Below, piece by piece: positions 4,000-35,353 of a stretch of DNA of 64,000 bases. Each line of letters starts with the position of its first letter. The stretch's first letter is position 1. Location of the stretch: the IMG/VR virus record IMGVR_UViG_3300024259_000010, positions 62,001 to 126,000 of that record; one strand, given 5' to 3'. A program made the translations under genes and the position numbers. A model generated the notes under the pieces. It saw only the letters and a program-made list of their open reading frames with translations, did no database searches and was not told where the DNA came from.

Positions 4000-5283
4000 A
4001 TGAACCCAGCATTAGCAGCAGAAGTTGCAAATAAAGTTGCGCAAGAGGGTAAAAAACATGGAAAAATAAGTGAAAACTTATCTATGTTCTTTATTAGATT
4101 GATGAATCTAGACGGTGAGAACTTCAAATCACTTACTGGTATTTCAAAACAAGTACAGGTATCAAGCATGGCTTACATCGAAGATAGTCTTGTAAACACC
4201 GAAATCGCAGTTCCTCTAATGGGCACTCTAAACCAGATTTATCTTGGTTATGTATTAACTGCATTAAATATTTATAACTCTATCGGTCGCTCTAAGACAC
4301 TACGTGAAGTAGTAGGTCGTGTAGCAAATGAAGATATCTCATTACATATCTCTGAAGAGAATTTGATCGATCAACATTTTGGTAAGGCTAATGTTTCTAC
4401 TGAAGGACATGATGCTGCTAAGATCTATAACATTGAAGATGCTGTTAAGCATTTAGCTACTGGTCGTCTTATTGAATTTGAGTTCAATCTTAATTCTATA
4501 CAGATGTCTGAATTCGGAGGCGGTGGAAAAGATACAACTGTAGCAACGGATGTATCAGATAATTCTAGAGATACACGTTTTGAAAAAGATACAGATGCAA
4601 ATGGTAATGTTATAAGAGGCGATAATATGCATGAAGCCGGTGGTACTCTTAAAGAAAAAGGTGATACTACGAAAACTACTATTAAGTCACTACCAGGAGT
4701 TGTTAAAGTTCCTCTGTATGTTTCAGTCAAACCTGTGTTGTTACCTGAGTCAGTTGCAAAAGCTATCTTTAAGCTTAACTTCCCTATGTCTCTTAAGAGA
4801 CGTTGGATGCAAGTTAAGACACGTGAGATTAGTTTCTTCAAAGATTTCTTATTGTCATTAGACCTTATTAATCTTCACAAGAAAGCATTGCGTGCTGATA
4901 AGAACAATGTACTTTCTCGTTTCTATAACGACAAAGCTAAAAAAGACAGAATGCGTATTAAGTCTGCCATCTTTGGTAACCAGAAAAATAATCTGGCTAG
5001 TTCTATGATTATCATTTCTAAAGAGACATTTGATACTGTTGCAAAAGAAGCTAAACTTAACTTTGCTAATCCTAACGATCGTCAGAAGTTCTTCAATGAA
5101 TCATATTCTATGATGCTTGTTGTTGTTGACGAAATGTATGAGATGTGTGACATCTATTACAATGGTATTACCCAACCTAGTGAGATGCCTTACAAGGCTA
5201 TCAAGCAAGGGAATACTAAGTCCGGAGTTGACATGACTGAAATCATGAAGACTATTGCTAAGGGCTCTGCTCCTAGATTCTAA
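4000..5283 (+). CDS. Internal head / inner-body protein (phiKZ gp89-like)
   Basis: 427 aa, AAGGAG RBS; S/A-x-E candidate prohead-protease sites (ANE, STE); C-terminal GSAPRF; synteny. Confidence 0.6.
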   Translation: MNPALAAEVANKVAQEGKKHGKISENLSMFFIRLMNLDGENFKSLTGISKQVQVSSMAYIEDSLVNTEIAVPLMGTLNQIYLGYVLTALNIYNSIGRSKTLREVVGRVANEDISLHISEENLIDQHFGKANVSTEGHDAAKIYNIEDAVKHLATGRLIEFEFNLNSIQMSEFGGGGKDTTVATDVSDNSRDTRFEKDTDANGNVIRGDNMHEAGGTLKEKGDTTKTTIKSLPGVVKVPLYVSVKPVLLPESVAKAIFKLNFPMSLKRRWMQVKTREISFFKDFLLSLDLINLHKKALRADKNNVLSRFYNDKAKKDRMRIKSAIFGNQKNNLASSMIIISKETFDTVAKEAKLNFANPNDRQKFFNESYSMMLVVVDEMYEMCDIYYNGITQPSEMPYKAIKQGNTKSGVDMTEIMKTIAKGSAPRF

Positions 5284-10432: not shown

Positions 10433-12337
10433 TCAGGTGTCCTTATCTTGGTTGATATTAACACCATCAGGAATTAATACCTCATTCGTAAATAGGAACT
10501 TAATTGCAACTTCTCCAAAACGCTTCAAGAATTCAGTGTCGATAGATTTAGGTTGAATGATATTGGAGCTACCTCGCATAATATCATCTCTAGTAAACCA
10601 TCTAACCTCACCTGTAGTAACATCCATACTAGTCATATCTCTATCATAATCACGATTACCATAGATATAGTCTTTGAGTTCTTTTACTCTACTAGTTGGA
10701 AGCTTCTTACCACGTAGCTTCATCCCTAATCTAGTAAACGGATCAAGGTATTGTTCTTTTGGAATTGGAGCCTTGTCGATATATATAAGTTCTAGCATAG
10801 AATGAAAGGCATTCAAAAATATTTTAGCTATGTTTTTTTCTAAAAGATATGTTCCTCTCGAATCACTAACATTTTGAACTAAGCCAAAAGATTCGATATT
10901 TTCTCCATCAAAGTAAACCTTTTTGATCGACTTCTTGAGAGATTTATATCCACCCAAGGTAATCCCTTTGGATAGCGATTCTTTAACAGCTGCTAGCGCA
11001 TCTACAAGAACATCTTTACCTGCTCGATTATCATATCCAGATCCACCAATAACGATATAACCTTGTGCTTTACATTTAACAGCACTGGCAATACGTTTAG
11101 CAACGTCAGCCATATTAGATCCATCGTATACTTTAGCTCTAGAGTTTTTGATATCGTCTAGGAATTCATCAATTAGATAAACAAGAGATTTAGCTGGAGA
11201 AGTTTCTTTCTCCAATTCAGGATGAGAACCATCTACATTATACTCAACAAGATTCTTAATATATAAAGTTTCATTTTCATATTTAAAATCAATGTTGTTA
11301 AATGAGATAGAGGTATCCATCATATCTCTACGTAAATATCCAGTGGTAGCATATAGGGCTTCTAGATCATTAATAACAGGATGTTGCATCATAACTCTAA
11401 AGATAGTGATATCAACACCTTCTTTACGTCTAGTATAAAACAGTTCTGATAACTCAGATACAACTTTGGCATCCCTACCAAATCCAGTTATGATAACGAG
11501 AGGTCTATCTTCTGGTTTTCTATCGTTGATCTTCTTCTTGAGCTGTGTATATTCCAATCCAGTACAAGCAAGTTCACTAGATGTAACAATTAACTCGGAG
11601 TCTTCAGAATTGAATGTAGTACCGACCTCATTATTTAACATCTGATTACAGAGGATGAAAGCATTACATGAATATGAACTATCATCCACTTCAAGTTTAA
11701 ACTTCACATCAGTTTCTTTAATCTCTTTACGAAAGATGATAGTATCCCAAGCATGTTTAGGAAGCGTTGTCATTAACTCTGCTACCAATGAGCTTAGTTC
11801 TCTATCTCCATGTGAACTAGTTAGAGCTTGACTATATGCAATCTTATGTACAAAATCAGTATCACTAAGATCAATATCAATTGAGTAATTATGATCTAAC
11901 TCTTCAAGAACATTGTCACAGAATCTACCATATGCATCTAAGAAAAGCTTACGATTCACATATTGATTCTTATGTAAGTATTCTCTCAGTTGCGATAGTA
12001 GTTTTGTAGTGATCAACATACTTGATGTTGTACCGTCTCCAGCAGCATTATCAATCTTCTTACCAATGTAGGCAAGCATCTTTCTAGTTAACTCTTGGAT
12101 AGGGTTAATGTAAGTTACAGCATTGACGATATTAATACCGTCTGTTGTAAACACTGGTTCAGCTAATGGGTTAGTAGCATCAGGTGGTAACATTGCAAAC
12201 TTCCCATAAGGACCGCAATGGTTTTCTAATAGTTTACCTAGATCTTCTAGGGTCTTACACATAATATCATTAATACTATCTTGGTCGACAATATTACTAG
12301 CACCAATGTTAGTATTTAATACTTTCAAATTATCCAT
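10433..12337 (-). CDS. groEL: Phage GroEL-like chaperonin (divergent)
   Basis: GPYG (GPKG), FTTDG (ITKDG), AGDGTTS (GDGTTT), VDALAA (EDALHA). Start at 12337 (MDNLK, AAGGG RBS) is preferred over 12367. Confidence 0.8.
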   Translation of the reverse strand: MDNLKVLNTNIGASNIVDQDSINDIMCKTLEDLGKLLENHCGPYGKFAMLPPDATNPLAEPVFTTDGINIVNAVTYINPIQELTRKMLAYIGKKIDNAAGDGTTSSMLITTKLLSQLREYLHKNQYVNRKLFLDAYGRFCDNVLEELDHNYSIDIDLSDTDFVHKIAYSQALTSSHGDRELSSLVAELMTTLPKHAWDTIIFRKEIKETDVKFKLEVDDSSYSCNAFILCNQMLNNEVGTTFNSEDSELIVTSSELACTGLEYTQLKKKINDRKPEDRPLVIITGFGRDAKVVSELSELFYTRRKEGVDITIFRVMMQHPVINDLEALYATTGYLRRDMMDTSISFNNIDFKYENETLYIKNLVEYNVDGSHPELEKETSPAKSLVYLIDEFLDDIKNSRAKVYDGSNMADVAKRIASAVKCKAQGYIVIGGSGYDNRAGKDVLVDALAAVKESLSKGITLGGYKSLKKSIKKVYFDGENIESFGLVQNVSDSRGTYLLEKNIAKIFLNAFHSMLELIYIDKAPIPKEQYLDPFTRLGMKLRGKKLPTSRVKELKDYIYGNRDYDRDMTSMDVTTGEVRWFTRDDIMRGSSNIIQPKSIDTEFLKRFGEVAIKFLFTNEVLIPDGVNINQDKDT

Positions 12338-12719
12338 TATTATTTCCCTTGTCAATCTGGTTCTCAACAGCCGCCTTAGCAGCCTGCCTTGTTGTTATGT
12401 ATTCATCAGATATTTCTATGGCACGTTTATCATAAGCTCTGAATGTTACAAAATCTATATCATACAGATCCTTCAAAACCATGCCACAGATATCTTTGAA
12501 ATATACGGTTGTCCCCATTGGGTCTTCGTAAATTGTTCTGAAAGCTAATTCTTCAACTAGTTCCGAAAATATATTACAACCGTATTCTTCAATGTCTGAG
12601 AAATAATCATAAGTACTTGAATCGATAAATTCAGATTTAGATTTTTTATCGAATGAAGTATTTAGATATAGTTGGTATACAAATTTATCCATACCTTCTA
12701 TATCAGGCTTGTTATCCAT
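12330..12719 (-). CDS. Hypothetical protein
   Basis: 129 aa; stop overlaps the chaperonin start. Confidence 0.55.
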   Translation of the reverse strand: MDNKPDIEGMDKFVYQLYLNTSFDKKSKSEFIDSSTYDYFSDIEEYGCNIFSELVEELAFRTIYEDPMGTTVYFKDICGMVLKDLYDIDFVTFRAYDKRAIEISDEYITTRQAAKAAVENQIDKGNNNG

Positions 12720-14350: not shown

Positions 14351-15148
14351 CTATTTCTTTTTCTTTATATAAATAAAACTTAATATGGGGAATGATGAAA
14401 CAGTGTTCATCGCATCCTCATATGTGTAATAAAATCTGACAACCCCACCGACAATTCCGATGTTGATATATAGTTTAGCATCTTTTTGTTTCTTAACAAA
14501 CTCGCTTATACTTACAGATGTTATTCCTTCAAACTGTGGTAACTTAAATGGTTTATATCCTGTAAAATCAAACTCAAGAATATTAACATTAGATTTAATA
14601 AAAGGTGTCCAATCTACTTCATGTTTAACCCAACTATTGGGATTACCATAAAGATCTATAAAACTATTAAACATATCTTCAATATAATCACGCTCAATAT
14701 GAGACATCTTAAAGACAACTGGGAATTGTACAACGGTATCTACCTTCTTTACTTTACGTGTTTTGTTAACATATAAATATGTTCCACAATCAGATATATG
14801 TAGTACTTCAGTAATTCCTTTTTTATCTTTATGTTCACGTATTAAAGCTTGTACTTCAAATATATTTACAGCACATCCTCTAGTGTCACCTAATTTATCT
14901 ATTGGTAAATACACACTAAGCATCTTAATGAAATCAATGTTCTTCTGATCCACCGAATGAATAGTATCTTCAATAGTTGGACGTACAATCAATAACTCTG
15001 ATGGTTCCAATGTTGAATACACTGCTCTATTCGGTGTGTCATTAAACATATAAATGTAACGTTGTTTTCTACAAAACAAAGAAGAAAAATATTGTTTCCA
15101 TAATTTCTTAAATGGTTTATCATCAATGTCGTATTTTAGATCATCCAT
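14351..15148 (-). CDS. Hypothetical protein coupled to DNA polymerase
   Basis: 265 aa; start overlaps the polymerase stop by 8 nt. Confidence 0.6.
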   Translation of the reverse strand: MDDLKYDIDDKPFKKLWKQYFSSLFCRKQRYIYMFNDTPNRAVYSTLEPSELLIVRPTIEDTIHSVDQKNIDFIKMLSVYLPIDKLGDTRGCAVNIFEVQALIREHKDKKGITEVLHISDCGTYLYVNKTRKVKKVDTVVQFPVVFKMSHIERDYIEDMFNSFIDLYGNPNSWVKHEVDWTPFIKSNVNILEFDFTGYKPFKLPQFEGITSVSISEFVKKQKDAKLYINIGIVGGVVRFYYTYEDAMNTVSSFPILSFIYIKKKK

Positions 15149-17240
15149 AAATATCCTTTAACATTAACTTTTGTTTTGAGTAACCAACACCCATGTTTAA
15201 ACTATCTAGTGTTAGATATACAGGGTTAACATTATAGTAAGCAAGATGTCTTGTATCAATCAATGGTAGTAACTCATCTGGTACTTTATTTTGAGTTGCT
15301 TCAATAAAGAACGATGAAGGCCATTTCTTATTTATCTCAATGAACTGTTTAAACTTATCATGGATAACTGGGTCCATTTCTTTTAGTTGTGCAAAATATA
15401 GTTCCGTTGGTTTAATTATTTTCAACAAACGTAATTTATCCGGAGGACGGATCTCACCATATTTCTCACCAAAGATAAAGTTCCAAGCCTTCGTATAAAA
15501 GAATGCTGTTCTATCAGCATCATCGTAGTCATCTGCATTACCAAATGAAACAATAGGAAGGAATTGTAATTCACCCTTTTTAAGAGATGTATCAATCTTG
15601 GTTTCAAATGCAACTGTCTTGTCGATAATATCAGTAGCAGAGATAGCCCCACTCATGACGGGTTTAAGAATATCATTAATCAAAAGATTACTAGCAAACT
15701 CTTTCGCTTCCATTGACGCACTGACACCTCGGATACTTGCACCCTTAATATCAGGTTTCATCTCATTCAGGAATACTCCTTCTTGAACCTTAATAATACC
15801 AGCATACACTTTCTTAATGTCAAACAAAAGAAGGGATGGATAAAGGAATTCATTCTTCATCTTAATATCTGCAATATCATCTCCAGTTGCCCCAATACCA
15901 ATAATGTATTTACCCATCGTATCTGCATTAGCTTCAGATAACCAATATGTTACTAAGGCCGCAATGTTGTAACTACCATGAACAATCTCTTCTCCACCTG
16001 TAAACCAAACTGCCCAGTCTTTCGCTGTATAGATAACAGAGTCTGTATCCGACACAACAACTGCTTGTCTCTGCATAGAACTTCTATGCAATGCATGTTG
16101 GAAATTAATATCGTGGAAAACAAATGTATCAAATAGATTATTAAATACGTCTAGATGTTTAGAAACATTTCTATGTACTTGTACACACATCTTCGCTGCT
16201 TCTGGAAACTCTTCAACAATGTCTTTAATATTAACATCTTTTAATTCATTAGACACGACCGTTGTAACGATAGCCATAATGTCACCATTGCATTTATAAT
16301 ACATATCAGGTGTTATATCAGAATCTATCTTACCATTAGGTTTTGTATTAAATACATTACTAACTAGAGGTTTGAATATTTCTTCATTTTCCATTAACAA
16401 ATGTTTTAAGTTATTGTGATAATATATGAAATCAATAATGTGTTGTGGTAACTGCATTAAATAATCGATTACGTATGTTTCTTCTAACTTAATACTTCTA
16501 TCGTACAATTGTATCTGTTGATTCAAATATCGTAACAGTGTTCCAAATTCAATATGCTTAAGACCATATTTATTTATTGTTGTGTTAATAGATTTAGCTG
16601 AAGGACCATAGTTCATAACAATTGAAATTAAGTTAGTAACTTCTTCAATATTAAACAATGGTAGATTACCACCTAAGAATTGTTCACAACATGTGAATGA
16701 ATTTGAGATCAACATACGAGCAGTTGATGTAACTGCGTTATAAGATCCTTTGTCATAGAAAAGATTTGATGCTGATCCATAACCACCAGGTAATGCATTA
16801 AGTTTTACTTTAATAGCATTCTGCTCTGCTTTATATTTAGCAGCCAGTTCTTTATTACCATCTGCTACAGCTTTAAACATTTTCTTCTTAACTGATGATC
16901 TGAACTTTAATCCATCTTTAACCAATGCTGATACAAATGATCGTTTCTTAGTAACGGGTACATACAAACTACCACTTGGTGATACAATAGCATCTTTTAA
17001 TATATTTGCAAACTCAGTAAACTTTAGAGTTTGTTGTTCAAGTTTTCCATCAGCGACTGTTCTAACAACATCAATGTTTGGTAGACTAACATTATCTTCA
17101 ATTTGTTTATTCACAAATGTTGTCGCCTCATCCTTTGATATATTCTTAGATGTCATAAGGAATCTAACCATGTTTTGAACATAGGTTTCACACAAAGATG
17201 ATCTATCAATTTTACTTACTGACCGCTTCTTTCTTTTCAT
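15141..17240 (-). CDS. Family B DNA polymerase, split subunit (phiKZ gp82-like)
   Basis: 699 aa; motif B KVKLNALPG, motif C SDTDSVIY, KKVYAG and IKG; no exonuclease domain evident. Confidence 0.85.
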   Translation of the reverse strand: MKRKKRSVSKIDRSSLCETYVQNMVRFLMTSKNISKDEATTFVNKQIEDNVSLPNIDVVRTVADGKLEQQTLKFTEFANILKDAIVSPSGSLYVPVTKKRSFVSALVKDGLKFRSSVKKKMFKAVADGNKELAAKYKAEQNAIKVKLNALPGGYGSASNLFYDKGSYNAVTSTARMLISNSFTCCEQFLGGNLPLFNIEEVTNLISIVMNYGPSAKSINTTINKYGLKHIEFGTLLRYLNQQIQLYDRSIKLEETYVIDYLMQLPQHIIDFIYYHNNLKHLLMENEEIFKPLVSNVFNTKPNGKIDSDITPDMYYKCNGDIMAIVTTVVSNELKDVNIKDIVEEFPEAAKMCVQVHRNVSKHLDVFNNLFDTFVFHDINFQHALHRSSMQRQAVVVSDTDSVIYTAKDWAVWFTGGEEIVHGSYNIAALVTYWLSEANADTMGKYIIGIGATGDDIADIKMKNEFLYPSLLLFDIKKVYAGIIKVQEGVFLNEMKPDIKGASIRGVSASMEAKEFASNLLINDILKPVMSGAISATDIIDKTVAFETKIDTSLKKGELQFLPIVSFGNADDYDDADRTAFFYTKAWNFIFGEKYGEIRPPDKLRLLKIIKPTELYFAQLKEMDPVIHDKFKQFIEINKKWPSSFFIEATQNKVPDELLPLIDTRHLAYYNVNPVYLTLDSLNMGVGYSKQKLMLKDIYG

Positions 17241-17331
17241 AAAATTTATACCTCATTTGTTTCTTCAAACAATGTCCTCAATGAGTATTTTTTAAACAAT
17301 AGGGTATCCGTGTTATTCAATAAATTATAGG

Positions 17332-17350
17332 CATATATTACTTATATAGA
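17332..17350 (+). promoter_or_regulatory. Early-type promoter motif CATATATTACTTATATAGA
   Basis: Repeated motif lying upstream of three small ORFs. Confidence 0.65.
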
Positions 17351-17381
17351 TAAACTGATTTAATAATGAAAAGGAAAGCTT

Positions 17382-17503: not shown

Positions 17504-17659
17504 ATGGAAAAAAATTGGAAAGAACGCTTTGCTGGTAACAAAGACATGGTGATTGTAGCAGCTGAGGGTGCAATCGAAGGTGCAAAAGATGCCGCTATTA
17601 TTTTAGGTGGTATTGGTATTTTCTTTGCCTGCGTTAAGTATTGCAAAGATAATAATTAG
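17504..17659 (+). CDS. Small membrane protein, 51 aa
   Basis: GGAG RBS; MEKNWKERFAGNKDMVIVAAEGAIEGAKDAAIILGGIGIFFACVKYCKDNN with a C-terminal hydrophobic helix. Confidence 0.65.
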   Translation: MEKNWKERFAGNKDMVIVAAEGAIEGAKDAAIILGGIGIFFACVKYCKDNN

Positions 17660-17738: not shown

Positions 17739-17906
17739 ATGGCTGAAGAAGAAGAAGCATTGGTTGTAGAAGGTGAACAAAAAGAAGGTGTCAATTGGCG
17801 CGGTGTCGCCCACGACACATATACTGGAGTAAAGGAAGGCGGCAAGATTGTACTTGGTACACTCGCTGTTGTCGGTCTTTGTAAATATATCTTCGGTGGT
17901 GATTAA
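17739..17906 (+). CDS. Small membrane protein, 55 aa, probable paralog of 17504-17659
   Basis: AAGGAGG RBS; MAEEEEALVVEGEQKEGVNWRGVAHDTYTGVKEGGKIVLGTLAVVGLCKYIFGGD. Confidence 0.7.
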   Translation: MAEEEEALVVEGEQKEGVNWRGVAHDTYTGVKEGGKIVLGTLAVVGLCKYIFGGD

Positions 17907-17914
17907 TCACTGTT

Positions 17915-17949
17915 AAAATATAACCCTGTAAAAGGGGTTATATTTTTTT
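17915..17949 (+). terminator. Rho-independent terminator
   Basis: Stem AAAATATAACCC/GGGTTATATTTT followed by a T run. Confidence 0.7.
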
Positions 17950-18064
17950 GCCCACATTTGAATGACGGCTACGCCTATGCTTATATCAGGGGGTGTAAAT
18001 TTATGTATTATAATTTAATCATCAATTAAAATAAAAAGAATAGAAAATACGATAGTGTTTGACT

Positions 18065-18170
18065 CGCGTGCGCGTATAGTACAGAGTACTTAATACTACG
18101 TATATTAAATATAACTATATATTATACGTAGTATATATATATTTATATATATGTTATATACTTGCACGCG
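18065..18170. repeat. Nested inverted repeats with (TA)n core and CGCG-rich flanks
   Basis: CGCGTGCgcGTATA (18065-18078) pairs with TATACttGCACGCG (18157-18170); perfect ATACTACGTATA (18093-18104) pairs with TATACGTAGTAT (18123-18134). Confidence 0.7.
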
Positions 18171-18264
18171 CCTGCGCGCGAACTAACGCTCCGCGTTCTC
18201 TCCCCCTCTATAAAATAGGTAAATTGATTATTTTTTTAATTTTTAATAAATGAACACCTATTGA

Positions 18265-18273
18265 CATTATATG
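18265..18273 (+). promoter_or_regulatory. Late-type promoter motif CATTATATG
   Basis: CATnnTATG about 36 nt upstream of the operon carrying a virion RNAP subunit. Confidence 0.4.
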
Positions 18274-18309
18274 GACAAAACTATATTATTTAAATAAAGG
18301 ATTTACAAT

Positions 18310-19302
18310 ATGGATACATTAGACTACTATAAAGAAGTTATAGATATTATATTGAAATCATCTGAGAGCATCACCGAGTACATGATACTTAAGTATGGCG
18401 TTGATGGTGTTAATGATTTTGAAAACTATGATTTACGTAATGTGTATACTGAATGTCTTAAACTGTTACTTGAAGAACTACATCAGATAGGTATTGAATT
18501 TAATGAAACTACTGATCTAGAATACAACTCTGTGGTTACAAGAGTAGCAATTCTATTACGATATATGTTTGACAAGAAAGAACTCAATATACATATTAAT
18601 TCATCCGAGACTATAAAGACAGCTGTTCATGATTACATCAATGATGGTAATTACAATGAAGATCTGTTTATCACTGGATTAATCGAAACACTGTTTGAAG
18701 TAAATAAGCTATCTCTAAATTGGGAGTTCTTACACCGCAATAGATTTACATTTAAAAATACTGACAAGTTGCTTAAGCATGTATCAGTAATCATGGATAA
18801 GGATTTGTATATAACAGATGATCATGCAGATAAAATCTCTAGATACATTGTTGCAATTGTTAACCATGTTAATTTCGTAAGAGAGACAGTACAGTTTGTA
18901 TTAAGTAACTATGTAGCTGTTCTTGATTACTCAATGTCTGATTTTGATTTCAAATTATATGATGTAGATTTAAATAGAATACCTGTGGAATACATTGATA
19001 TTTATTTAGATGAAAGTGATCCTCATCCAGTATGTACTAAACGTGATGGTGATATAGATTTCATTACTTCTCATAAGAAAGCTAAAGATCATCATTTTAA
19101 TTATTATATTGAGAATGGTAATAAGACACCTACGTTCAAACAGATTGTAGTATTGTTTGCTGAGTATTTAAGACCTCATTTATCTATTGAACAGAACATG
19201 GAAATGTTTACAGTTCTGACAAACAAAGCCTCTTTTAAAGAATCTGATGTAACCATATTAAAAGATTTGGTTAATTTATATTTTGAAAAGAAGAAAGGTT
19301 GA
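18310..19302 (+). CDS. Hypothetical protein
   Basis: 330 aa, AAGGA RBS. Confidence 0.65.
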   Translation: MDTLDYYKEVIDIILKSSESITEYMILKYGVDGVNDFENYDLRNVYTECLKLLLEELHQIGIEFNETTDLEYNSVVTRVAILLRYMFDKKELNIHINSSETIKTAVHDYINDGNYNEDLFITGLIETLFEVNKLSLNWEFLHRNRFTFKNTDKLLKHVSVIMDKDLYITDDHADKISRYIVAIVNHVNFVRETVQFVLSNYVAVLDYSMSDFDFKLYDVDLNRIPVEYIDIYLDESDPHPVCTKRDGDIDFITSHKKAKDHHFNYYIENGNKTPTFKQIVVLFAEYLRPHLSIEQNMEMFTVLTNKASFKESDVTILKDLVNLYFEKKKG

Positions 19303-19305
19303 TAG

Positions 19306-20604
19306 ATGTTTATTAAATACATTAAGCCTAGAATGGAAAGATTGTTAGAACGTGCATTCTTATTAAACACATTCACATACTTATATGATCGGCCTGTTGT
19401 AGGAGTTGATGATCCTAATCAAGAAGATATTTTTTTTCTTAAAAAAGACATGACTCCAGCTACTGCTAGATATGGATACTATGTGGGAGAAACCTTAGTA
19501 GAGATCCCAGTATCAAAACATAACACAGGTGCACCGTTTTCTATTTACAATCATATCAAAATTAAGAATGGTGACATAGCTAACTATACTTCAGAATCAG
19601 AAATTGATACAACCATTGGTAGATTTATTTCAAACTACATAGTAGTAGTATCTATTGTAGGAGATAAGATCCCATACCACAATGACATATGGGATATTAA
19701 GAATCTTCAAAATCAATACTCACAATTGATATTGGATGGTAAAGCACCAGCTACTGATTATAGAAAATATATTGACCATGGGTATTTCTTAGCTCATTTT
19801 TCTGAACTATGTGTTCCTACACTAACTGAAAAAGCAATGACTACAGATCCTCAAATACCTATTCGTAAAGCTGAGCTACTAGAGTTACATAAAGATGAAT
19901 TAAGTGATCCTAAAGTAGTGGCTGCAATCGAAGAAGAGCTTATCAATATGGATAAAGCTTGGATCAAAGGCGATCCTGCTGAAGGGTTCTATGGAGCATC
20001 TAAGAAATCGTACAATGTCCAACGTAAGAAAATGCACATCATGGTTGGTGGAGTTGAAGACTTCAATCCAGATGGTGGAACTATTACTATATCGCATTCA
20101 TTAAGTGAAGGTATTAATGCAAAAGCATTTGCCGCTGTTGCTAATGAGATTAGAAAAGGTCATTATGATCGTGGTAAAGAAACCGCTAAAGGTGGTGAGA
20201 TGACCAAGTTCATTTTCAGAGCTTTCCAAGATATTAAAATTACTGAAGATGATTGTAAAACTAAACGTGGTATCCCAGTTGTATTTGGTGATATACTTAA
20301 CATAGAAGATTTTATAAGTCGTATGATATTAGTTGGTCCTGACAAGAGAGAGGTTGAGATCACTAGAGAAAATATGAAATCTTATATCGGTAAGACTGTT
20401 ATATTACGATCACCTATGACATGTGCATCTGAATTAGGACTATGTTATCACTGCAGTGGTCTTAACTTTAAAAAATTAAATATCGCTAACCCTGGTGTAA
20501 GAGCTATTGAAATTAGTTCTAAGTTTATGTATGCTTCTATGTTATCAATGCATGGAACAGCCATTCAAACTAATCAGATAAATCCAGAAGAATTCATTGT
20601 TTAA
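19306..20604 (+). CDS. Virion RNA polymerase beta' C-terminal subunit (phiKZ gp80-like)
   Basis: Bridge-helix-like RGKETAKGG, ITEDDCKT, LRSPMTC...CYHCSG zinc site, trigger-loop-like SMLSMHG. Confidence 0.85.
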   Translation: MFIKYIKPRMERLLERAFLLNTFTYLYDRPVVGVDDPNQEDIFFLKKDMTPATARYGYYVGETLVEIPVSKHNTGAPFSIYNHIKIKNGDIANYTSESEIDTTIGRFISNYIVVVSIVGDKIPYHNDIWDIKNLQNQYSQLILDGKAPATDYRKYIDHGYFLAHFSELCVPTLTEKAMTTDPQIPIRKAELLELHKDELSDPKVVAAIEEELINMDKAWIKGDPAEGFYGASKKSYNVQRKKMHIMVGGVEDFNPDGGTITISHSLSEGINAKAFAAVANEIRKGHYDRGKETAKGGEMTKFIFRAFQDIKITEDDCKTKRGIPVVFGDILNIEDFISRMILVGPDKREVEITRENMKSYIGKTVILRSPMTCASELGLCYHCSGLNFKKLNIANPGVRAIEISSKFMYASMLSMHGTAIQTNQINPEEFIV

Positions 20605-32716: not shown

Positions 32717-35353
32717 TTAGTAATATTGCCCTGTGGTAGGCACTTCTTCAGACTCATCATCTTCAACGACTTCTTCGTCGTCTTCTGGAACAGCTACTTC
32801 TTCTTCAGAAGTAATTTCCTCAGATGTTTCTTCATCAGATTCTTCATCAGATTCATCTTCTTCTGTTGATTCTTCTTCTGTAGACTCTTCTTCTTCCGAA
32901 GTTTCCTCTTCAGTAGTTTCTTCCTCAGTAGATTCTTCTTCCGAAGTTTCTTCATCAGATTCTTCAGTAGTGTCGTCATTTGCTTCAGAGATTACATTGT
33001 CAGCATCTTCGGCAAACTCTTCACCAGGTTCCGCTTGTTCCTCATCAGACTCTTCCTCAGTAACTTCATTTTCATCAACTGATTCTTCTTCCTCAACGGT
33101 TTCAGATTCTTCAATTTCTAATGGAGCAGGTTCTTCACTTTCAGATGCTTCAGTCTCTTCAACTACTTCCTCTTCTTCAGTAGACTCTTCCTCAGTAGAT
33201 CCCTCATCGGACTCTTCTTCAGTATACTCTTCTTCTTCTTCGGCTGTAATCTCTTCTGAACCCTCTTCTTCTTCAGGAACGATTTCAACTTCTTCACCAT
33301 CTTCAGATGGAGCTTCAATTTCTTCATCATCCGCTGGGACAGCTACTTCTTCATCTTCACTATCTTCAAGAATTTCTTCACCATCTTCTTCAACCTGAGT
33401 TTCTTCAGAATCATCATCTAAGTCTGCAGCTTCACTAGGAGTCTCTTCTTCCGAAGGAGCTTCAGTTTCTTCCACAGTCTCTTCTTCAGTTGTTTCCTCT
33501 TCCACGACTTCTTCCTCGGAAGTAACTTCTTCCTCTTCAGAGCCTTCTTCTACAACTTCTTCTTCGATGATTTCTTCTTCAGAACCTTCTTCTTCAACCA
33601 CTTCTTCTTCAGAAGTAACTTCTTCAGCAGGTTCTTCATCTGGAACTACTTCAGTTTCTTCTTCAGCGGGCATATCTTCAACGACTTCTTCGTCGTCTTC
33701 TGGAACAGCCACTTCTTCTTCTTCAGAGGTAGTTTCTTCAGTTTGAACTTCTTCATCAGCCTCAGCTTCTTCTTCTACCTCTTCACCTTCTTCTTGAGCA
33801 GGTGTTTCTTCGATAGGTTCATCTGAATCAGTTTCAACAGTGTTTTCTTCTTCGTCTTCTGCAGTGATTTCACCAGGACCATCGTCAGTGGTTACTTCTT
33901 CCACAGGATCAACTTCTTCGAATTCACCTGGTTTATGAGTATCAGTCCCGTCACCATCATTGGCTTCAATAACTTCTTCTTCTTCCTCTTCTGGGACGGC
34001 TGTATCAGCATCTTCGTCAGCTTCCTCTTCAGGTTCTAACTCAGAGGAACATTTGCCTTCAATATCTGTTTCTTCAGATTCTTCTTCTTCAGAAGGTTCA
34101 TCATCAACAACAGGTACATCACCCTCTTCAACAACTTCGTCTTCAGATTCTTCTGGTACTTCAGTGTCCATAGCTTCAGAGACTTCCGCTTCACCTTCTT
34201 CAGGGATAGCAACTTCACCATCATCAGCATCTGAATCACCGGTATGAACTTCATCAGCGTCTTCTTCTTCAACTTCATCAGCTTCTTCAGTGTTATTCTC
34301 ACAAGCTTCAGGTGCACCAGCAGCGGCTACTTCTTCTTCCAATGAATCCTCGGTTTCTTCTTCGGTGGATTCTTCTTCACCTTCTTCAACCACTTCTTCA
34401 TCAGCATCTTCAGTTGTTACTTCAGCAACAGTATTGTTTTCAACTTTATCAAGAACGTTAATACAAGATTCAAGATAAGTTACAACTGATGTATTGATAG
34501 CAATGATTTTCTTAGAAAGTTCTGACATAGCTGTGGATAGTTCAATGTAACCTTCAGCTTTATCTTCACGTAGATCAGTAAGAGCTTCAATTTTAGTCAA
34601 TTTACCACTGATGTCTGAGTTAAGCTTAGAAATGTTAGCACATGTTTCAAGAACAAGTTTAGCAGATGTTAATGCATCCTGTACCATTCCAATATCTTTT
34701 ACAGATTTTTCCATCAGAACAATATCACTAACTTTAAGTTCAACTAAAGCTTTAACAGCATCAGCATCACCATCGAAGCTATTACTTGCAAGCATTTCAG
34801 CAACAGGTGAGAATAAGCTAAATGCGCTTACAGCTTCTTCAGCAAATTTCATAACATCCGAAGAAGGACAAGAAACTGCAGTTACATCAGCACCCCATTT
34901 AGGATCAGTGATCTTAGCTACAGTAGTAATGATGTCGTTCAGCTTAGCAGACAGTGAAGTCTGTAAGTTAGAGTACTCAGCTAATACCGATTCAATACTA
35001 TTCTTGAGAACCATTGCAGAATCTTCAATCTTCTTGTCAACAGTTTCAATAGAGTTATTGATTTCAGTAACGGTGGACTCAACATCTTTTTCTTCAAATG
35101 AAGGAGCAATGTCTTTAAGTTCACCTTTGAGTAATGATACCATGCTGTCATCGATACCGAATTGGCTAACAACACGTACGATGTCAGTTAGATTGTTTTT
35201 AGCGCTAGCCATTTTTTTCAACATGACAAAATGAGATTCGTGTTTGGTGACAGCATCAAACAGTTTGTTTTCAGCATTGATAATTTCCGATACAGAAATA
35301 CCTGCTAACTGGGTCTGTTCTCCAGAGGATAGATTGGTTATTCCTAATTTCAT
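32717..35353 (-). CDS. Very acidic head/scaffold-like protein
   Basis: 878 aa; ~310-aa helical N-domain followed by ~560 aa of Glu/Asp-rich low-complexity sequence; AAGGA RBS. Confidence 0.7.
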   Translation of the reverse strand: MKLGITNLSSGEQTQLAGISVSEIINAENKLFDAVTKHESHFVMLKKMASAKNNLTDIVRVVSQFGIDDSMVSLLKGELKDIAPSFEEKDVESTVTEINNSIETVDKKIEDSAMVLKNSIESVLAEYSNLQTSLSAKLNDIITTVAKITDPKWGADVTAVSCPSSDVMKFAEEAVSAFSLFSPVAEMLASNSFDGDADAVKALVELKVSDIVLMEKSVKDIGMVQDALTSAKLVLETCANISKLNSDISGKLTKIEALTDLREDKAEGYIELSTAMSELSKKIIAINTSVVTYLESCINVLDKVENNTVAEVTTEDADEEVVEEGEEESTEEETEDSLEEEVAAAGAPEACENNTEEADEVEEEDADEVHTGDSDADDGEVAIPEEGEAEVSEAMDTEVPEESEDEVVEEGDVPVVDDEPSEEEESEETDIEGKCSSELEPEEEADEDADTAVPEEEEEEVIEANDGDGTDTHKPGEFEEVDPVEEVTTDDGPGEITAEDEEENTVETDSDEPIEETPAQEEGEEVEEEAEADEEVQTEETTSEEEEVAVPEDDEEVVEDMPAEEETEVVPDEEPAEEVTSEEEVVEEEGSEEEIIEEEVVEEGSEEEEVTSEEEVVEEETTEEETVEETEAPSEEETPSEAADLDDDSEETQVEEDGEEILEDSEDEEVAVPADDEEIEAPSEDGEEVEIVPEEEEGSEEITAEEEEEYTEEESDEGSTEEESTEEEEVVEETEASESEEPAPLEIEESETVEEEESVDENEVTEEESDEEQAEPGEEFAEDADNVISEANDDTTEESDEETSEEESTEEETTEEETSEEEESTEEESTEEDESDEESDEETSEEITSEEEVAVPEDDEEVVEDDESEEVPTTGQYY
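32759..33721. repeat. 48-bp direct repeat inside the acidic protein gene (32759-32806 and 33674-33721)
   Basis: ATCTTCAACGACTTCTTCGTCGTCTTCTGGAACAGC[T/C]ACTTCTTCTTC occurs twice and encodes EEEVAVPEDDEEVVED. Confidence 0.75.

What the first reader, a model, noticed from the sequence alone, without database searches (positions are those of the whole stretch)
17950..18260. Non-coding region with nested inverted repeats, (TA)n core and CG-rich flanks: candidate replication origin or structured element
Seen: ~310 nt without an ORF in a densely coding genome. It has a 12-bp perfect inner inverted repeat, a 14-bp outer one with 2 mismatches, long alternating purine-pyrimidine runs (CGCGTGCGCGTATA, TATATATATA, TGCGCGCG) that are atypical for this AT-rich DNA, and AGGGGG/CCCCCT at the edges. 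It lies near the DNA polymerase gene. Inference: a cruciform/unwinding element such as an origin, packaging or tethering site, or an ncRNA.
Basis: partly seen in the sequence, partly recalled or inferred. Interest (0 to 1): 0.6.

Follow-up and report, generated by a model that had tools for sequence, protein, structure and literature searches.

The report
Meltable palindrome with CG clamps
A single-copy non-coding element of a 236-kb phiKZ-like jumbo phage is the easiest-to-melt DNA in its genome. It is bracketed by the genome's only CG-rich alternating tracts and recurs at the same place in distant relatives, which makes it a candidate replication origin, a feature not yet mapped in this phage group.

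Summary
Window 17907-18309 is a 403-nt ORF-free gap in a 235,833-bp phiKZ-like jumbo phage from seawater metagenomes. A TA-rich imperfect palindrome (18065-18170) is flanked by the only two CpG-rich alternating purine-pyrimidine tracts in the genome. Six of the genome's 63 CGCG words lie here.

New results:
- The TA core is the least stable duplex of the whole genome at 40, 60 and 80 bp.
- The closest relative (polymerase 67% identical, 25% GC) has the same clamp / TA core / clamp layout with a different core sequence.
- In five of eight near-complete genomes, from two sub-clades whose polymerases are only 31-36% identical, the genome-wide stability minimum ranks 1 or 2. In each it lies 60-570 nt upstream of the same operon, which holds a gene at the phiKZ gp79 position and a phiKZ gp80-type virion RNA polymerase subunit. 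It is often accompanied by that genome's longest palindrome.
- phiKZ itself lacks the feature.

The element sits between an early-operon terminator and a candidate late promoter. It holds no early promoter, conserved ORF, tRNA or Rfam match.

Best reading, with function inferred and not shown: a DNA-level unwinding or cruciform element, most likely a replication origin (about 0.4). Rivals are a late-operon regulatory or insulator module, a programmed break or packaging site, a structured RNA, and low-complexity spacer.

The parts
15141..17240 (-). Divergent family-B DNA polymerase gene (context). Its start lies 825 nt from the element.
   Evidence: PF20286, E=1.9e-92. About 25% identical to polymerases of phiKZ-like phages.
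17305..17354 (+). Early-class promoter that drives two small ORFs (17504-17659 and 17739-17906).
   Evidence: PWM built from the genome's ATATATTAC sites scores 45.1 bits here. All 40 strong sites are on the + strand.
17915..17950 (+). Intrinsic terminator closing the early mini-operon: a 12-bp perfect stem followed by a T run.
   Evidence: Inverted repeat I16 and the sequence itself. The relative has three tandem terminator-like hairpins at the same place.
17951..17988 (.). Conserved block A. Its 23-nt core (17966-17988) is single-copy in the genome.
   Evidence: 22 of 23 positions match the 67% relative. No other copy in the genome with up to 6 mismatches. Absent from the more distant relatives. 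Function unknown.
18031..18046 (.). Conserved block B, a 16-nt A-rich word about 20 nt before the left clamp.
   Evidence: 15 of 16 positions match the relative.
18062..18078 (.). Left CG clamp. The alternating purine-pyrimidine tract CGCGTGCGCGTATA is at 18065-18078.
   Evidence: One of only two such tracts in 235,833 bp. Also forms the outer inverted-repeat arm.
18079..18163 (.). TA-rich core, an imperfect palindrome and the least stable duplex of the genome.
   Evidence: Rank 1 genome-wide at 40, 60 and 80 bp, with windows starting at 18110, 18100 and 18080. Nested inverted repeats. Fold z-scores -3.5 to -4.4.
18083..18097 (.). Degenerate CTTAA-centred palindrome (AGAGTACTTAATACT).
   Evidence: Matches the centre of the perfect palindrome in G001's element apart from one missing base. 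G001, G002 and G004 each have exactly one CTTAAG-centred perfect palindrome, always at this locus. Absent from the closest relative, so this is only a lead.
18093..18134 (.). Inner inverted repeat: 12 bp perfect (18093-18104 / 18123-18134), extending to 19-nt arms at 89%.
18164..18180 (.). Right CG clamp (GCACGCGCCTGCGCGCG).
   Evidence: Contains the second of the genome's two CpG-rich alternating tracts. Partner of the left clamp in all predicted folds.
18185..18197 (.). Small GC hairpin with a 5-bp stem and 3-nt loop.
   Evidence: Predicted in all folds. Not present in the relative.
18264..18273 (+). Candidate second-class (late-type) promoter word ACATTATATG for the downstream operon.
   Evidence: All 4 genomic copies lie 35-46 nt upstream of ORF starts. 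Of 13 CATTATATG copies, 8 lie 8-90 nt upstream. Conserved in the relative. Resembles the phiKZ late TATG motif described in PMC7598289.
18310..19302 (+). 330-aa all-helical protein of unknown function, positioned where phiKZ gp79 lies.
   Evidence: No Pfam or PHROG family. Syntenic homologues occur across the clade. The AF2 model (pLDDT 85) has no PDB fold match.
19306..20604 (+). Virion RNA polymerase beta'-like subunit, homologous to phiKZ gp80.
   Evidence: phrog_2962, E=5e-96. tblastn hit to phiKZ gp80 at 3e-39, annotated as a structural head protein.

Best explanation
The element is a single-copy signal that acts on the DNA, not through an RNA or a protein product. About 85 bp of TA-rich, imperfectly palindromic DNA melts or extrudes a cruciform more easily than any other stretch of the phage genome. 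It is bounded on both sides by short CG-rich alternating tracts.

Proposed mechanism (inferred, not shown):
- The clamps confine unwinding to the core, and perhaps bind a factor or flip to Z-DNA.
- Negative supercoiling, and/or a protein bound at the clamps or at the conserved flanking blocks A and B, opens the core.
- The phage helicase and polymerase load there.

On this reading the element is the replication origin, or one of the origins, of this jumbo phage. It lies in a gap expected to be transcriptionally quiet, between an early-operon terminator and the candidate late promoter of a virion RNA polymerase operon, 825 nt from the DNA polymerase gene.

What is shown: the anatomy, the uniqueness, the stability minimum and the conserved position. 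What is inferred: opening, loading and initiation.
For: 1. The core ranks 1 of the whole 235,833-bp genome for duplex instability at 40, 60 and 80 bp.
2. The flanks are the only two CpG-rich alternating tracts in a CpG-depleted genome. Six of 63 CGCG words lie in one 200-nt bin.
3. The 67% relative (25% GC) keeps the layout: clamp, a 120-nt core that is 93% AT, then a clamp containing (CG)7. The core sequence is different. All 10 CGCG words in that 6.5-kb contig lie inside the element, and the fold z-scores are -4.7 and -4.9.
4. In G000, G001, G002, G004 and G006 the genome-wide least stable window ranks 1 or 2 and lies 60-570 nt upstream of the homologous operon. These genomes span two sub-clades with 31-36% polymerase identity. 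The same holds locally in L007, L013 and L091.
5. G001's element is a roughly 105-bp AT palindrome (z = -7.6) next to that genome's longest CG alternating tract. It lies in a divergent intergenic region, where a terminator role is unlikely.
6. In G002 and G004 the genome's longest perfect palindrome is at this locus. G004 and G006 also carry iteron-like direct repeats next to the AT-rich stretch.
7. The element is single-copy. It contains no early promoter, conserved ORF, tRNA or Rfam family.
8. phiKZ, used as an outgroup control, shows no such minimum at the equivalent gap (ranks 28-175). The signal is therefore not a generic property of that promoter region.
Against: - No replication data of any kind were available. 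Only assembled contigs of DNA runs could be laid on the locus.
- Cumulative GC skew follows gene orientation and shows no turning point at the locus.
- Relatives at 46-48% polymerase identity have only 84-130 nt between the polymerase and the gp79-position gene, with no clamps or long palindrome. G008, G009 and phiKZ lack the feature. The extended element is therefore not universal.
- No sequence motif is shared across all the elements beyond A/T-rich words.
- No initiator protein was identified. The adjacent 330-aa protein has no recognisable fold.
- Large phages can replicate mainly by recombination-dependent initiation, which would make a fixed origin dispensable (general knowledge of T4).
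- The hairpin energy is not extreme for this genome.
Confidence: 0.4

Rival explanations
1. The element is an upstream regulatory or insulator module of the late virion RNA polymerase operon. The palindromes and clamps would be binding sites for a phage regulator, or would form a boundary keeping early transcription out of a late operon. The AT-rich core would be a bent or easily opened upstream element of the late promoter.
For: - In every lineage that has the element, it lies upstream of the same operon.
- It sits between an early terminator (three terminators in the relative) and a conserved late-type promoter word.
- It is unclear how phiKZ-type late promoters achieve specificity beyond the TATG motif (PMC7598289).
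- The unique perfect palindromes in G001, G002 and G004 look like operators for a dimeric protein.
Against: - The distance to the operon start varies from about 60 to 570 nt. In the window the clamp ends about 93 nt upstream of the candidate start site. That is loose spacing for an operator or an upstream promoter element.
- Of the many promoter regions in each genome, only this one is the global stability minimum.
- phiKZ and several relatives express the same operon without such an element.
- No shared motif was found.
Confidence: 0.25
2. The element is a programmed break or entry site. The unique palindrome extrudes as a cruciform or hairpin and is cut by a structure-specific nuclease, such as the phage's SbcD/Mre11-like enzyme, a resolvase or the terminase. 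This would create the end that starts recombination-dependent replication or headful packaging, as a pac-type site does.
For: - The element is unique and strongly palindromic, and is the longest palindrome of the genome in G002 and G004.
- The genome encodes an SbcD-like nuclease, 31% identical to phiKZ gp65 at E=2.6e-39.
- Two clusters of short palindromic words flanking a roughly 90-bp AT-rich stretch recall the layout of the phage P1 pac site (recalled from memory, not tested).
Against: - No pile-up of molecule ends could be assessed, because only contigs were laid.
- The window assembly and an independent assembly both run straight through the locus.
- No C5 cytosine methyltransferase was found that could regulate CGCG clusters.
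- The terminase gene was not located near the element.
- The contig break in the relative is explained by low complexity and strain variation: a 79-nt overlap with 2 mismatches.
Confidence: 0.12
3. The element acts as a structured RNA: a non-coding RNA, a processing site of the RNase III type, or a leader made by read-through from the early operon.
For: - As RNA it folds significantly better than shuffled sequence on either strand (z = -3.65 and -3.54).
- A GC-closed multi-hairpin layout recurs in the relative.
- Block A could be an unrecognised promoter.
Against: - No Rfam match.
- No early-promoter match within the element.
- It lies downstream of a strong terminator and upstream of the candidate promoter of the next gene.
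- The two strands fold equally well, as expected for a DNA palindrome.
- G001's version lies between divergent genes.
- No RNA runs exist for this phage.
Confidence: 0.08
4. The element has no function. It is a spacer between transcription units that drifted to TA and CG microsatellite-like sequence by replication slippage. Palindromy would then be a trivial consequence of self-complementary dinucleotide repeats.
For: - (TA)n and (CG)n are self-complementary.
- The core sequence is not conserved between the window and its closest relative.
- The extended element is missing in several relatives.
- Assemblers break at this locus.
Against: - Dinucleotide-preserving shuffles fold significantly worse.
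- CG tracts persist on both flanks in genomes of 34% and 25% GC with CpG observed/expected of 0.5-0.6.
- Blocks A and B and the clamp-proximal words are conserved against a saturated non-coding background.
- The stability minimum keeps the same position across lineages with only 31-36% polymerase identity.
- Strain variants in other seawater runs show just 1-2 changes in 18162-18371 against 8 changes in the next 280 nt of coding sequence.
Confidence: 0.1

Closest known systems
Herpesvirus oriL/oriS-type palindromic origins (comparison from general knowledge)
   Same: Both have an AT-rich palindrome centre that opens, flanked by GC-containing sites. Both are single or few in copy number and lie in an intergenic gap next to the DNA polymerase gene. 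Both are hard to assemble or clone.
   Different: There is no sequence relation. No homologue of the origin-binding helicase was sought or shown. The host, virus realm and flanking words all differ. Replication activity was not tested here.
Phage T4 oriF/oriG and the T7 primary origin (promoter plus downstream DNA unwinding element; general knowledge)
   Same: Both involve an AT-rich unwinding stretch next to phage promoters and to transcription or replication genes. The T7 origin also lies beside an RNA polymerase gene.
   Different: No promoter is seen reading into the core: the early PWM is negative. The element is a long palindrome with CG clamps, which those origins lack.
Bacterial and plasmid origins with a DNA unwinding element plus initiator repeats (oriC, iteron plasmids, lambda ori)
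   Same: The least stable AT-rich segment lies adjacent to repeated or palindromic candidate binding sites. Iteron-like repeats occur in the G004 and G006 versions.
   Different: The window's own element has no clear iterons, only the two clamps and one degenerate palindrome. No initiator gene was identified.
Protelomerase target sites (N15 telRL type, with a CG-alternating centre flanked by TA; recalled from memory)
   Same: Both combine short alternating CG with TATA words inside a large palindrome.
   Different: Here the CG tracts are at the edges and the TA at the centre, which is the reverse arrangement. The palindrome is imperfect. The locus is internal in two independent assemblies. Protelomerase was not searched for.
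Phage P1 pac site (recalled from memory)
   Same: Both have two clusters of short palindromic words bracketing roughly 90 bp of AT-rich DNA.
   Different: The P1 site lies inside the pacA gene and is regulated by Dam methylation. Here the element is intergenic, no C5 methylase was found, and no ends were mapped.

Membership tests
Replication origin (unwinding element plus initiator sites) | AT-rich segment of minimal duplex stability | tested here: met
   Rank 1 genome-wide at 40, 60 and 80 bp. Rank 1-2 at the same locus in G001, G002, G004 and G006.
Replication origin (unwinding element plus initiator sites) | Repeated or palindromic initiator-binding sites beside the unwinding element | tested here: inconclusive
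   There are two CG clamps, blocks A and B, and one degenerate CTTAA palindrome. Iteron-like repeats appear only in G004 and G006. No motif is shared by all versions. No binding protein is known.
Replication origin (unwinding element plus initiator sites) | One or few copies per genome, near replication genes | tested here: met
   Single copy. It lies 825 nt from the polymerase start. In the relatives the polymerase is 3-10 kb away (coordinates).
Replication origin (unwinding element plus initiator sites) | Initiation of DNA synthesis or a copy-number maximum at the site | not testable with these tools
   Only Logan contigs of DNA runs were available, with no raw reads.
Replication origin (unwinding element plus initiator sites) | Strand-composition switch (GC skew) at the site | tested here: not met
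   Cumulative skew follows gene orientation, with its minimum near 4 kb and maximum near 220 kb of the record. This is not decisive for phages.
Intrinsic terminator | GC-rich hairpin followed directly by a T/U run | tested here: not met
   That role is filled by 17915-17950. The large hairpin (18065-18170/18180) is followed by GAACTAACGC. G001's version lies between divergent genes.
Known RNA families (Rfam 15) and tRNA/tmRNA | Covariance-model match at gathering score; ARAGORN hit | tested here: not met
   No matches in the whole window.
Early promoter class of this phage (phiKZ-type virion RNA polymerase promoter) | Match to the conserved motif ending in ATATATTAC | tested here: not met
   The best PWM score in 17900-18320 is -7.8 bits, against more than 15 bits for the 40 true sites.
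Z-DNA-forming element with a dedicated reader protein | Alternating purine-pyrimidine CG-rich tracts; a Z-alpha domain protein | tested here: inconclusive
   The tracts are present: 14 and 8 nt in the window, 17 and 29 nt in the relative. No PF02295 match in the genome. Z-DNA formation itself is not testable here.
Protelomerase resolution site | Near-perfect long palindrome at the junction of the genome ends; protelomerase gene present | tested here: not met
   The palindrome is imperfect (arms 79-89% complementary, offset centres). The locus is internal in two assemblies. The enzyme was not searched for.
Chimalliviridae (nucleus-forming phiKZ-like phages): classification of the host genome | Chimallin shell protein gene | tested here: inconclusive
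   A single-sequence search with phiKZ gp54 found nothing in G000. PF20286 polymerase, a gp80-type RNA polymerase subunit, DUF7484 and a phiKZ-style early promoter are present. The phage is therefore called 'phiKZ-like' only.

The most novel reading that the evidence does not exclude
This could be the first defined replication origin of a clade of phiKZ-like jumbo phages. It would be a supercoil-gated origin in which a cruciform-prone TA palindrome, the most meltable DNA in the genome, is fenced by Z-DNA-capable CG clamps. The position next to the virion RNA polymerase operon and the polymerase gene is conserved across lineages whose proteins have diverged to about 33% identity, while the sequence itself turns over completely. 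A variant of this reading is that the phage's SbcD/Mre11-like nuclease cuts the extruded palindrome to launch recombination-dependent replication.
Probability: 0.3. Interest if true: 0.75.

Novelty: new variant of a known kind. Interest (0 to 1): 0.62.

Why it matters
The library searched here contains no description of where phiKZ-like jumbo phages start DNA replication. This work gives a concrete single-locus candidate and a simple rule that can be computed on other genomes: the genome-wide stability minimum upstream of the gp79/gp80-type operon, often with the genome's longest palindrome and CG tracts. The rule holds in five of eight near-complete genomes of an uncultivated clade and fails in phiKZ. 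That makes it testable in any cultivable member of the clade. If confirmed, it would help with annotation, with designing replicating or engineered jumbo-phage vectors, and with studying how replication is organised in these phages. If the regulatory reading is right instead, the element marks an unusual control region for virion RNA polymerase genes.

Tried and rejected
- **Nucleotide search against GenBank phages** (near and distant modes): no match.
- **Scans of viral contigs** with the 330-aa protein and with block A: only the single 8-kb relative was found.
- **Rfam and tRNA scans**: nothing.
- **Sigma-70 promoter scan**: 7 sites found against 7.5 expected, so uninformative. One 11-of-12 match at 18261-18289 overlaps the late-type word.
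- **Genome-wide DNA-fold scan**: the element is not among the 12 most stable 120-nt windows. 'Strongest hairpin' was therefore rejected as the distinguishing property.
- **CGCG avoidance as a restriction signature**: rejected, because the genome-wide count (63) matches the Markov expectation (58) given CpG depletion.
- **Reads**: nine seawater DNA runs hold the locus, but all are kept only as Logan contigs at depth 2-10. No ends, coverage profile or RNA could be read.
- **Contig break in the relative as a sign of a physical end**: rejected, because the two contigs overlap by 79 nt with 2 mismatches.
- **The clamp word CGCGYRCGCG**: absent from ten other related records and from phiKZ, apart from one chance site.
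- **Block A core and a GCTACGC word as a clade-wide motif**: rejected.
- **Shared k-mers across nine elements**: only A/T-rich words.
- **The 330-aa neighbour as an initiator**: no support from Pfam, PHROGs, the Atlas, or an AF2 model searched with Foldseek against the PDB.
- **Z-alpha domain and C5 methylase**: absent.
- **Not used**: the large profile search (search of protein representatives), complex prediction, and any alternative genetic code.

Full report
**What the window is.** The window is bases 62,001-126,000 of a 235,833-bp IMG/VR virus record with 34% GC, estimated 91% complete. It has no nucleotide relatives among GenBank phages. Seawater metagenome runs hold it.

It encodes the divergent family-B DNA polymerase typical of phiKZ-like phages (PF20286) and a homologue of phiKZ gp80, a virion RNA polymerase subunit. 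It also has a phiKZ-style early promoter word ending in ATATATTAC, with 40 strong copies, all on the + strand. A single-sequence search with phiKZ chimallin found nothing (inconclusive), so I call the phage 'phiKZ-like' and do not claim that it forms a nucleus.

**Check of the observation.** The ORF-free gap is 17907-18309 (403 nt), the largest such gap in the 175 kb of the genome outside the early-gene region.

Three features exceed chance:
- Six of the genome's 63 CGCG words lie in one 200-nt bin.
- The two flanks (18065-18078 and 18173-18180) are the only CpG-rich alternating purine-pyrimidine tracts in the genome.
- The folds are 3.5-4.4 standard deviations better than dinucleotide shuffles.

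Two corrections apply. CGCG is rare genome-wide only because CpG is depleted. The hairpin energy is not extreme, because the genome is full of long perfect terminator hairpins. The AGGGGG/CCCCCT pair is not conserved.

**Anatomy, left to right.**
- An early promoter (17305-17354) drives two small ORFs.
- A clean intrinsic terminator (17915-17950) closes them.
- Conserved block A follows (17951-17988; its 23-nt core is single-copy).
- An A-rich spacer contains conserved block B (18031-18046).
- Then come the left CG clamp, the TA-rich imperfect palindrome (18079-18163, with nested repeats) and the right CG clamp (18164-18180).
- A small GC hairpin lies at 18185-18197.
- The word ACATTATATG (18264-18273) belongs to a second promoter class. 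All four genomic copies lie 35-46 nt upstream of ORF starts. It resembles the phiKZ late TATG motif (PMC7598289).
- The operon starts at 18310.

The element therefore occupies a gap expected to be transcriptionally quiet. It contains no early-promoter match (best -7.8 bits).

**Main new result in the window genome.** With SantaLucia nearest-neighbour energies, the core is the least stable duplex in all 235,833 bp at window sizes of 40, 60 and 80 bp. The most meltable DNA of the genome is thus bracketed by its only two CG-rich alternating tracts.

**Closest relative.** One relative (polymerase 67% identical, 25% GC) is split over two contigs of a single metagenome. Both contigs end inside the element, overlapping by 79 nt with 2 mismatches. 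I joined them in a script for comparison only.

This relative has the same layout: a clamp, a 120-nt core that is 93% AT, and a clamp with (CG)7, which is remarkable at 25% GC. Every CGCG in that 6.5-kb contig lies in the element. The core sequence differs. Blocks A and B, the clamp-proximal words and the late promoter word are conserved. The fold z-scores are -4.7 and -4.9.

**Wider clade.** Relatives at 46-48% polymerase identity have only 84-130 nt between the polymerase and the gp79-position gene, with no clamps. In three of those four loci the short gap is still, at one or more window sizes, the least stable stretch of the fetched locus.

I fetched seven near-complete related genomes and ran the same scan. 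The genome-wide least stable window lies 60-570 nt upstream of the homologous operon in these genomes:
- G000: rank 1.
- G001: rank 1 at all window sizes.
- G002: rank 1 by a wide margin, -54.4 against -64.1 kcal/mol for 60 bp.
- G004: ranks 2, 2, 2 and 1.
- G006: ranks 14, 1, 2 and 1.

In G007 it ranks 5-39. G008 and G009 do not show it. The two sub-clades share only 31-36% polymerase identity, and the operon homology is established. If one takes the chance of the top-ranked region landing there as about 0.01 per genome, four to five of eight cannot be coincidence. The genomes are related, however, so the proper statement is that the property has been maintained while the sequence turned over.

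**The relatives' elements look like origins.**
- G001 has a roughly 105-bp AT palindrome (z = -7.6) abutting that genome's longest CG alternating tract, in a 740-nt divergent intergenic region.
- G002 and G004 carry their genomes' longest perfect palindromes there, with arms of 20 and 22 nt.
- G001, G002 and G004 each have exactly one CTTAAG-centred perfect palindrome, always at this locus. Generic terminators in these genomes are GC-rich hairpins with GATATC-type centres.
- G004 and G006 add iteron-like direct repeats.
- The window has a one-base-deleted version of G001's central word at 18083-18097. The closest relative lacks it, so I treat this as a lead only.
- phiKZ itself shows no minimum at the gp78/gp79 gap (ranks 28-175). 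This serves as a negative control and limits the feature to this environmental clade.

**Interpretation.** A DNA-level unwinding or cruciform-prone element is well supported (about 0.7). Its most likely role is a replication origin (about 0.4). The arguments for this are the minimal stability, the bounding clamps, the single copy, the quiet intergenic position next to replication genes, the conserved position with free sequence, and the palindromes and iteron-like repeats in relatives.

The arguments against are the lack of any replication data, an uninformative skew, the absence of the extended element in some relatives and in phiKZ, no shared motif and no identified initiator. The adjacent 330-aa protein is all-helical with no fold match.

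The rivals are a regulatory or insulator module of the late operon, a programmed break or packaging site, a structured RNA, and non-functional low-complexity spacer. The phage does encode an SbcD-like nuclease, which is relevant to the break-site reading. Each rival is weighed in its own section of this report.

**Comparison with known systems.** The element works most like palindromic viral origins, such as herpesvirus oriL/oriS, and like origins built from an unwinding element plus binding sites. It is not a demonstrated member of any family. It fails the tests for an intrinsic terminator, an Rfam family, the early promoter class and a protelomerase site.

The held literature contains no mapped origin for phiKZ-like or chimalliviruses.

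**Limits.** Only assembled contigs of DNA runs could be laid on the locus, using 4,001 letters in one call.

Noticed in passing
window 7285, 17305, 24951, 25590, 39077 (+) and 35 more sites in the record: All 40 strong copies of the early promoter motif (about 50 nt, ending in ATATATTAC) lie on the + strand of the 236-kb record, and none on the - strand. Cumulative GC skew rises almost monotonically from about 4 kb to 220 kb.
   Followed up: partly
window 18264-18273, and 12 other sites in the record: A second promoter-like word, CATTATATG, occurs on both strands. Eight of 13 copies lie 8-90 nt upstream of ORF starts. It resembles the phiKZ late TATG motif.
   Followed up: partly
L004 tail and L005 head (relative from metagenome 3300001533): The relative's assembly breaks inside the element. 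The two contigs overlap by 79 nt with 2 mismatches, which suggests strain variation in the TA core. Another relative's contig (P0004, no DNA available) also ends 245 nt upstream of its polymerase gene.
   Followed up: partly
G000:C1:198124-199173 (outside the window): An SbcD/Mre11-like nuclease gene, 31% identical to phiKZ gp65 ('palindrome specific endonuclease' subunit). It could act on the unique palindrome.
   Followed up: no
L106:2977-2995 (G007, 318-kb relative): One of only two CpG-rich alternating tracts in this 318-kb genome lies about 250 nt from the locally least stable stretch at the same locus. It appears to be inside the N-terminal coding region of the RNA polymerase subunit gene.
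   Followed up: no
G002 and G004 (L118-L141): CTTAAG is strongly depleted in these two genomes (16-17 sites in 238 kb, against 38-86 in the other genomes). It is nevertheless kept at the centre of the genome's longest palindrome at the element.
   Followed up: no
G004:199300-199640 (L139): Three or four TTGTTAAGAA-type direct repeats spaced about 26-30 nt apart, and a tRNA-like gene, sit inside the 1.1-kb divergent intergenic region that holds the element.
   Followed up: no
L007:4530-4600 and 4905-4940: The 50% relative has, in the same gap, a CG cluster next to the polymerase start and a G-rich hairpin whose core (GGCGTAGCC) is the reverse complement of the window's block A core. This may be chance (p about 0.01).
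   Followed up: partly
window 10433-12367 (-): A 644-aa protein with an N-terminal Cpn60/TCP-1 chaperonin match (E=2.7e-14), conserved in synteny downstream of the polymerase in the relatives.
   Followed up: no
window 32717-35353 (-): The 878-aa ORF region has unusual composition: GC up to 0.43, GC skew -0.37 and AT skew -0.34, compared with a window average of about 0.33 GC.
   Followed up: no
window 60761 and many intergenic sites: The genome carries many long perfect hairpins with stems of 14-25 bp, presumably terminators. Several are more stable than the element studied here.
   Followed up: partly
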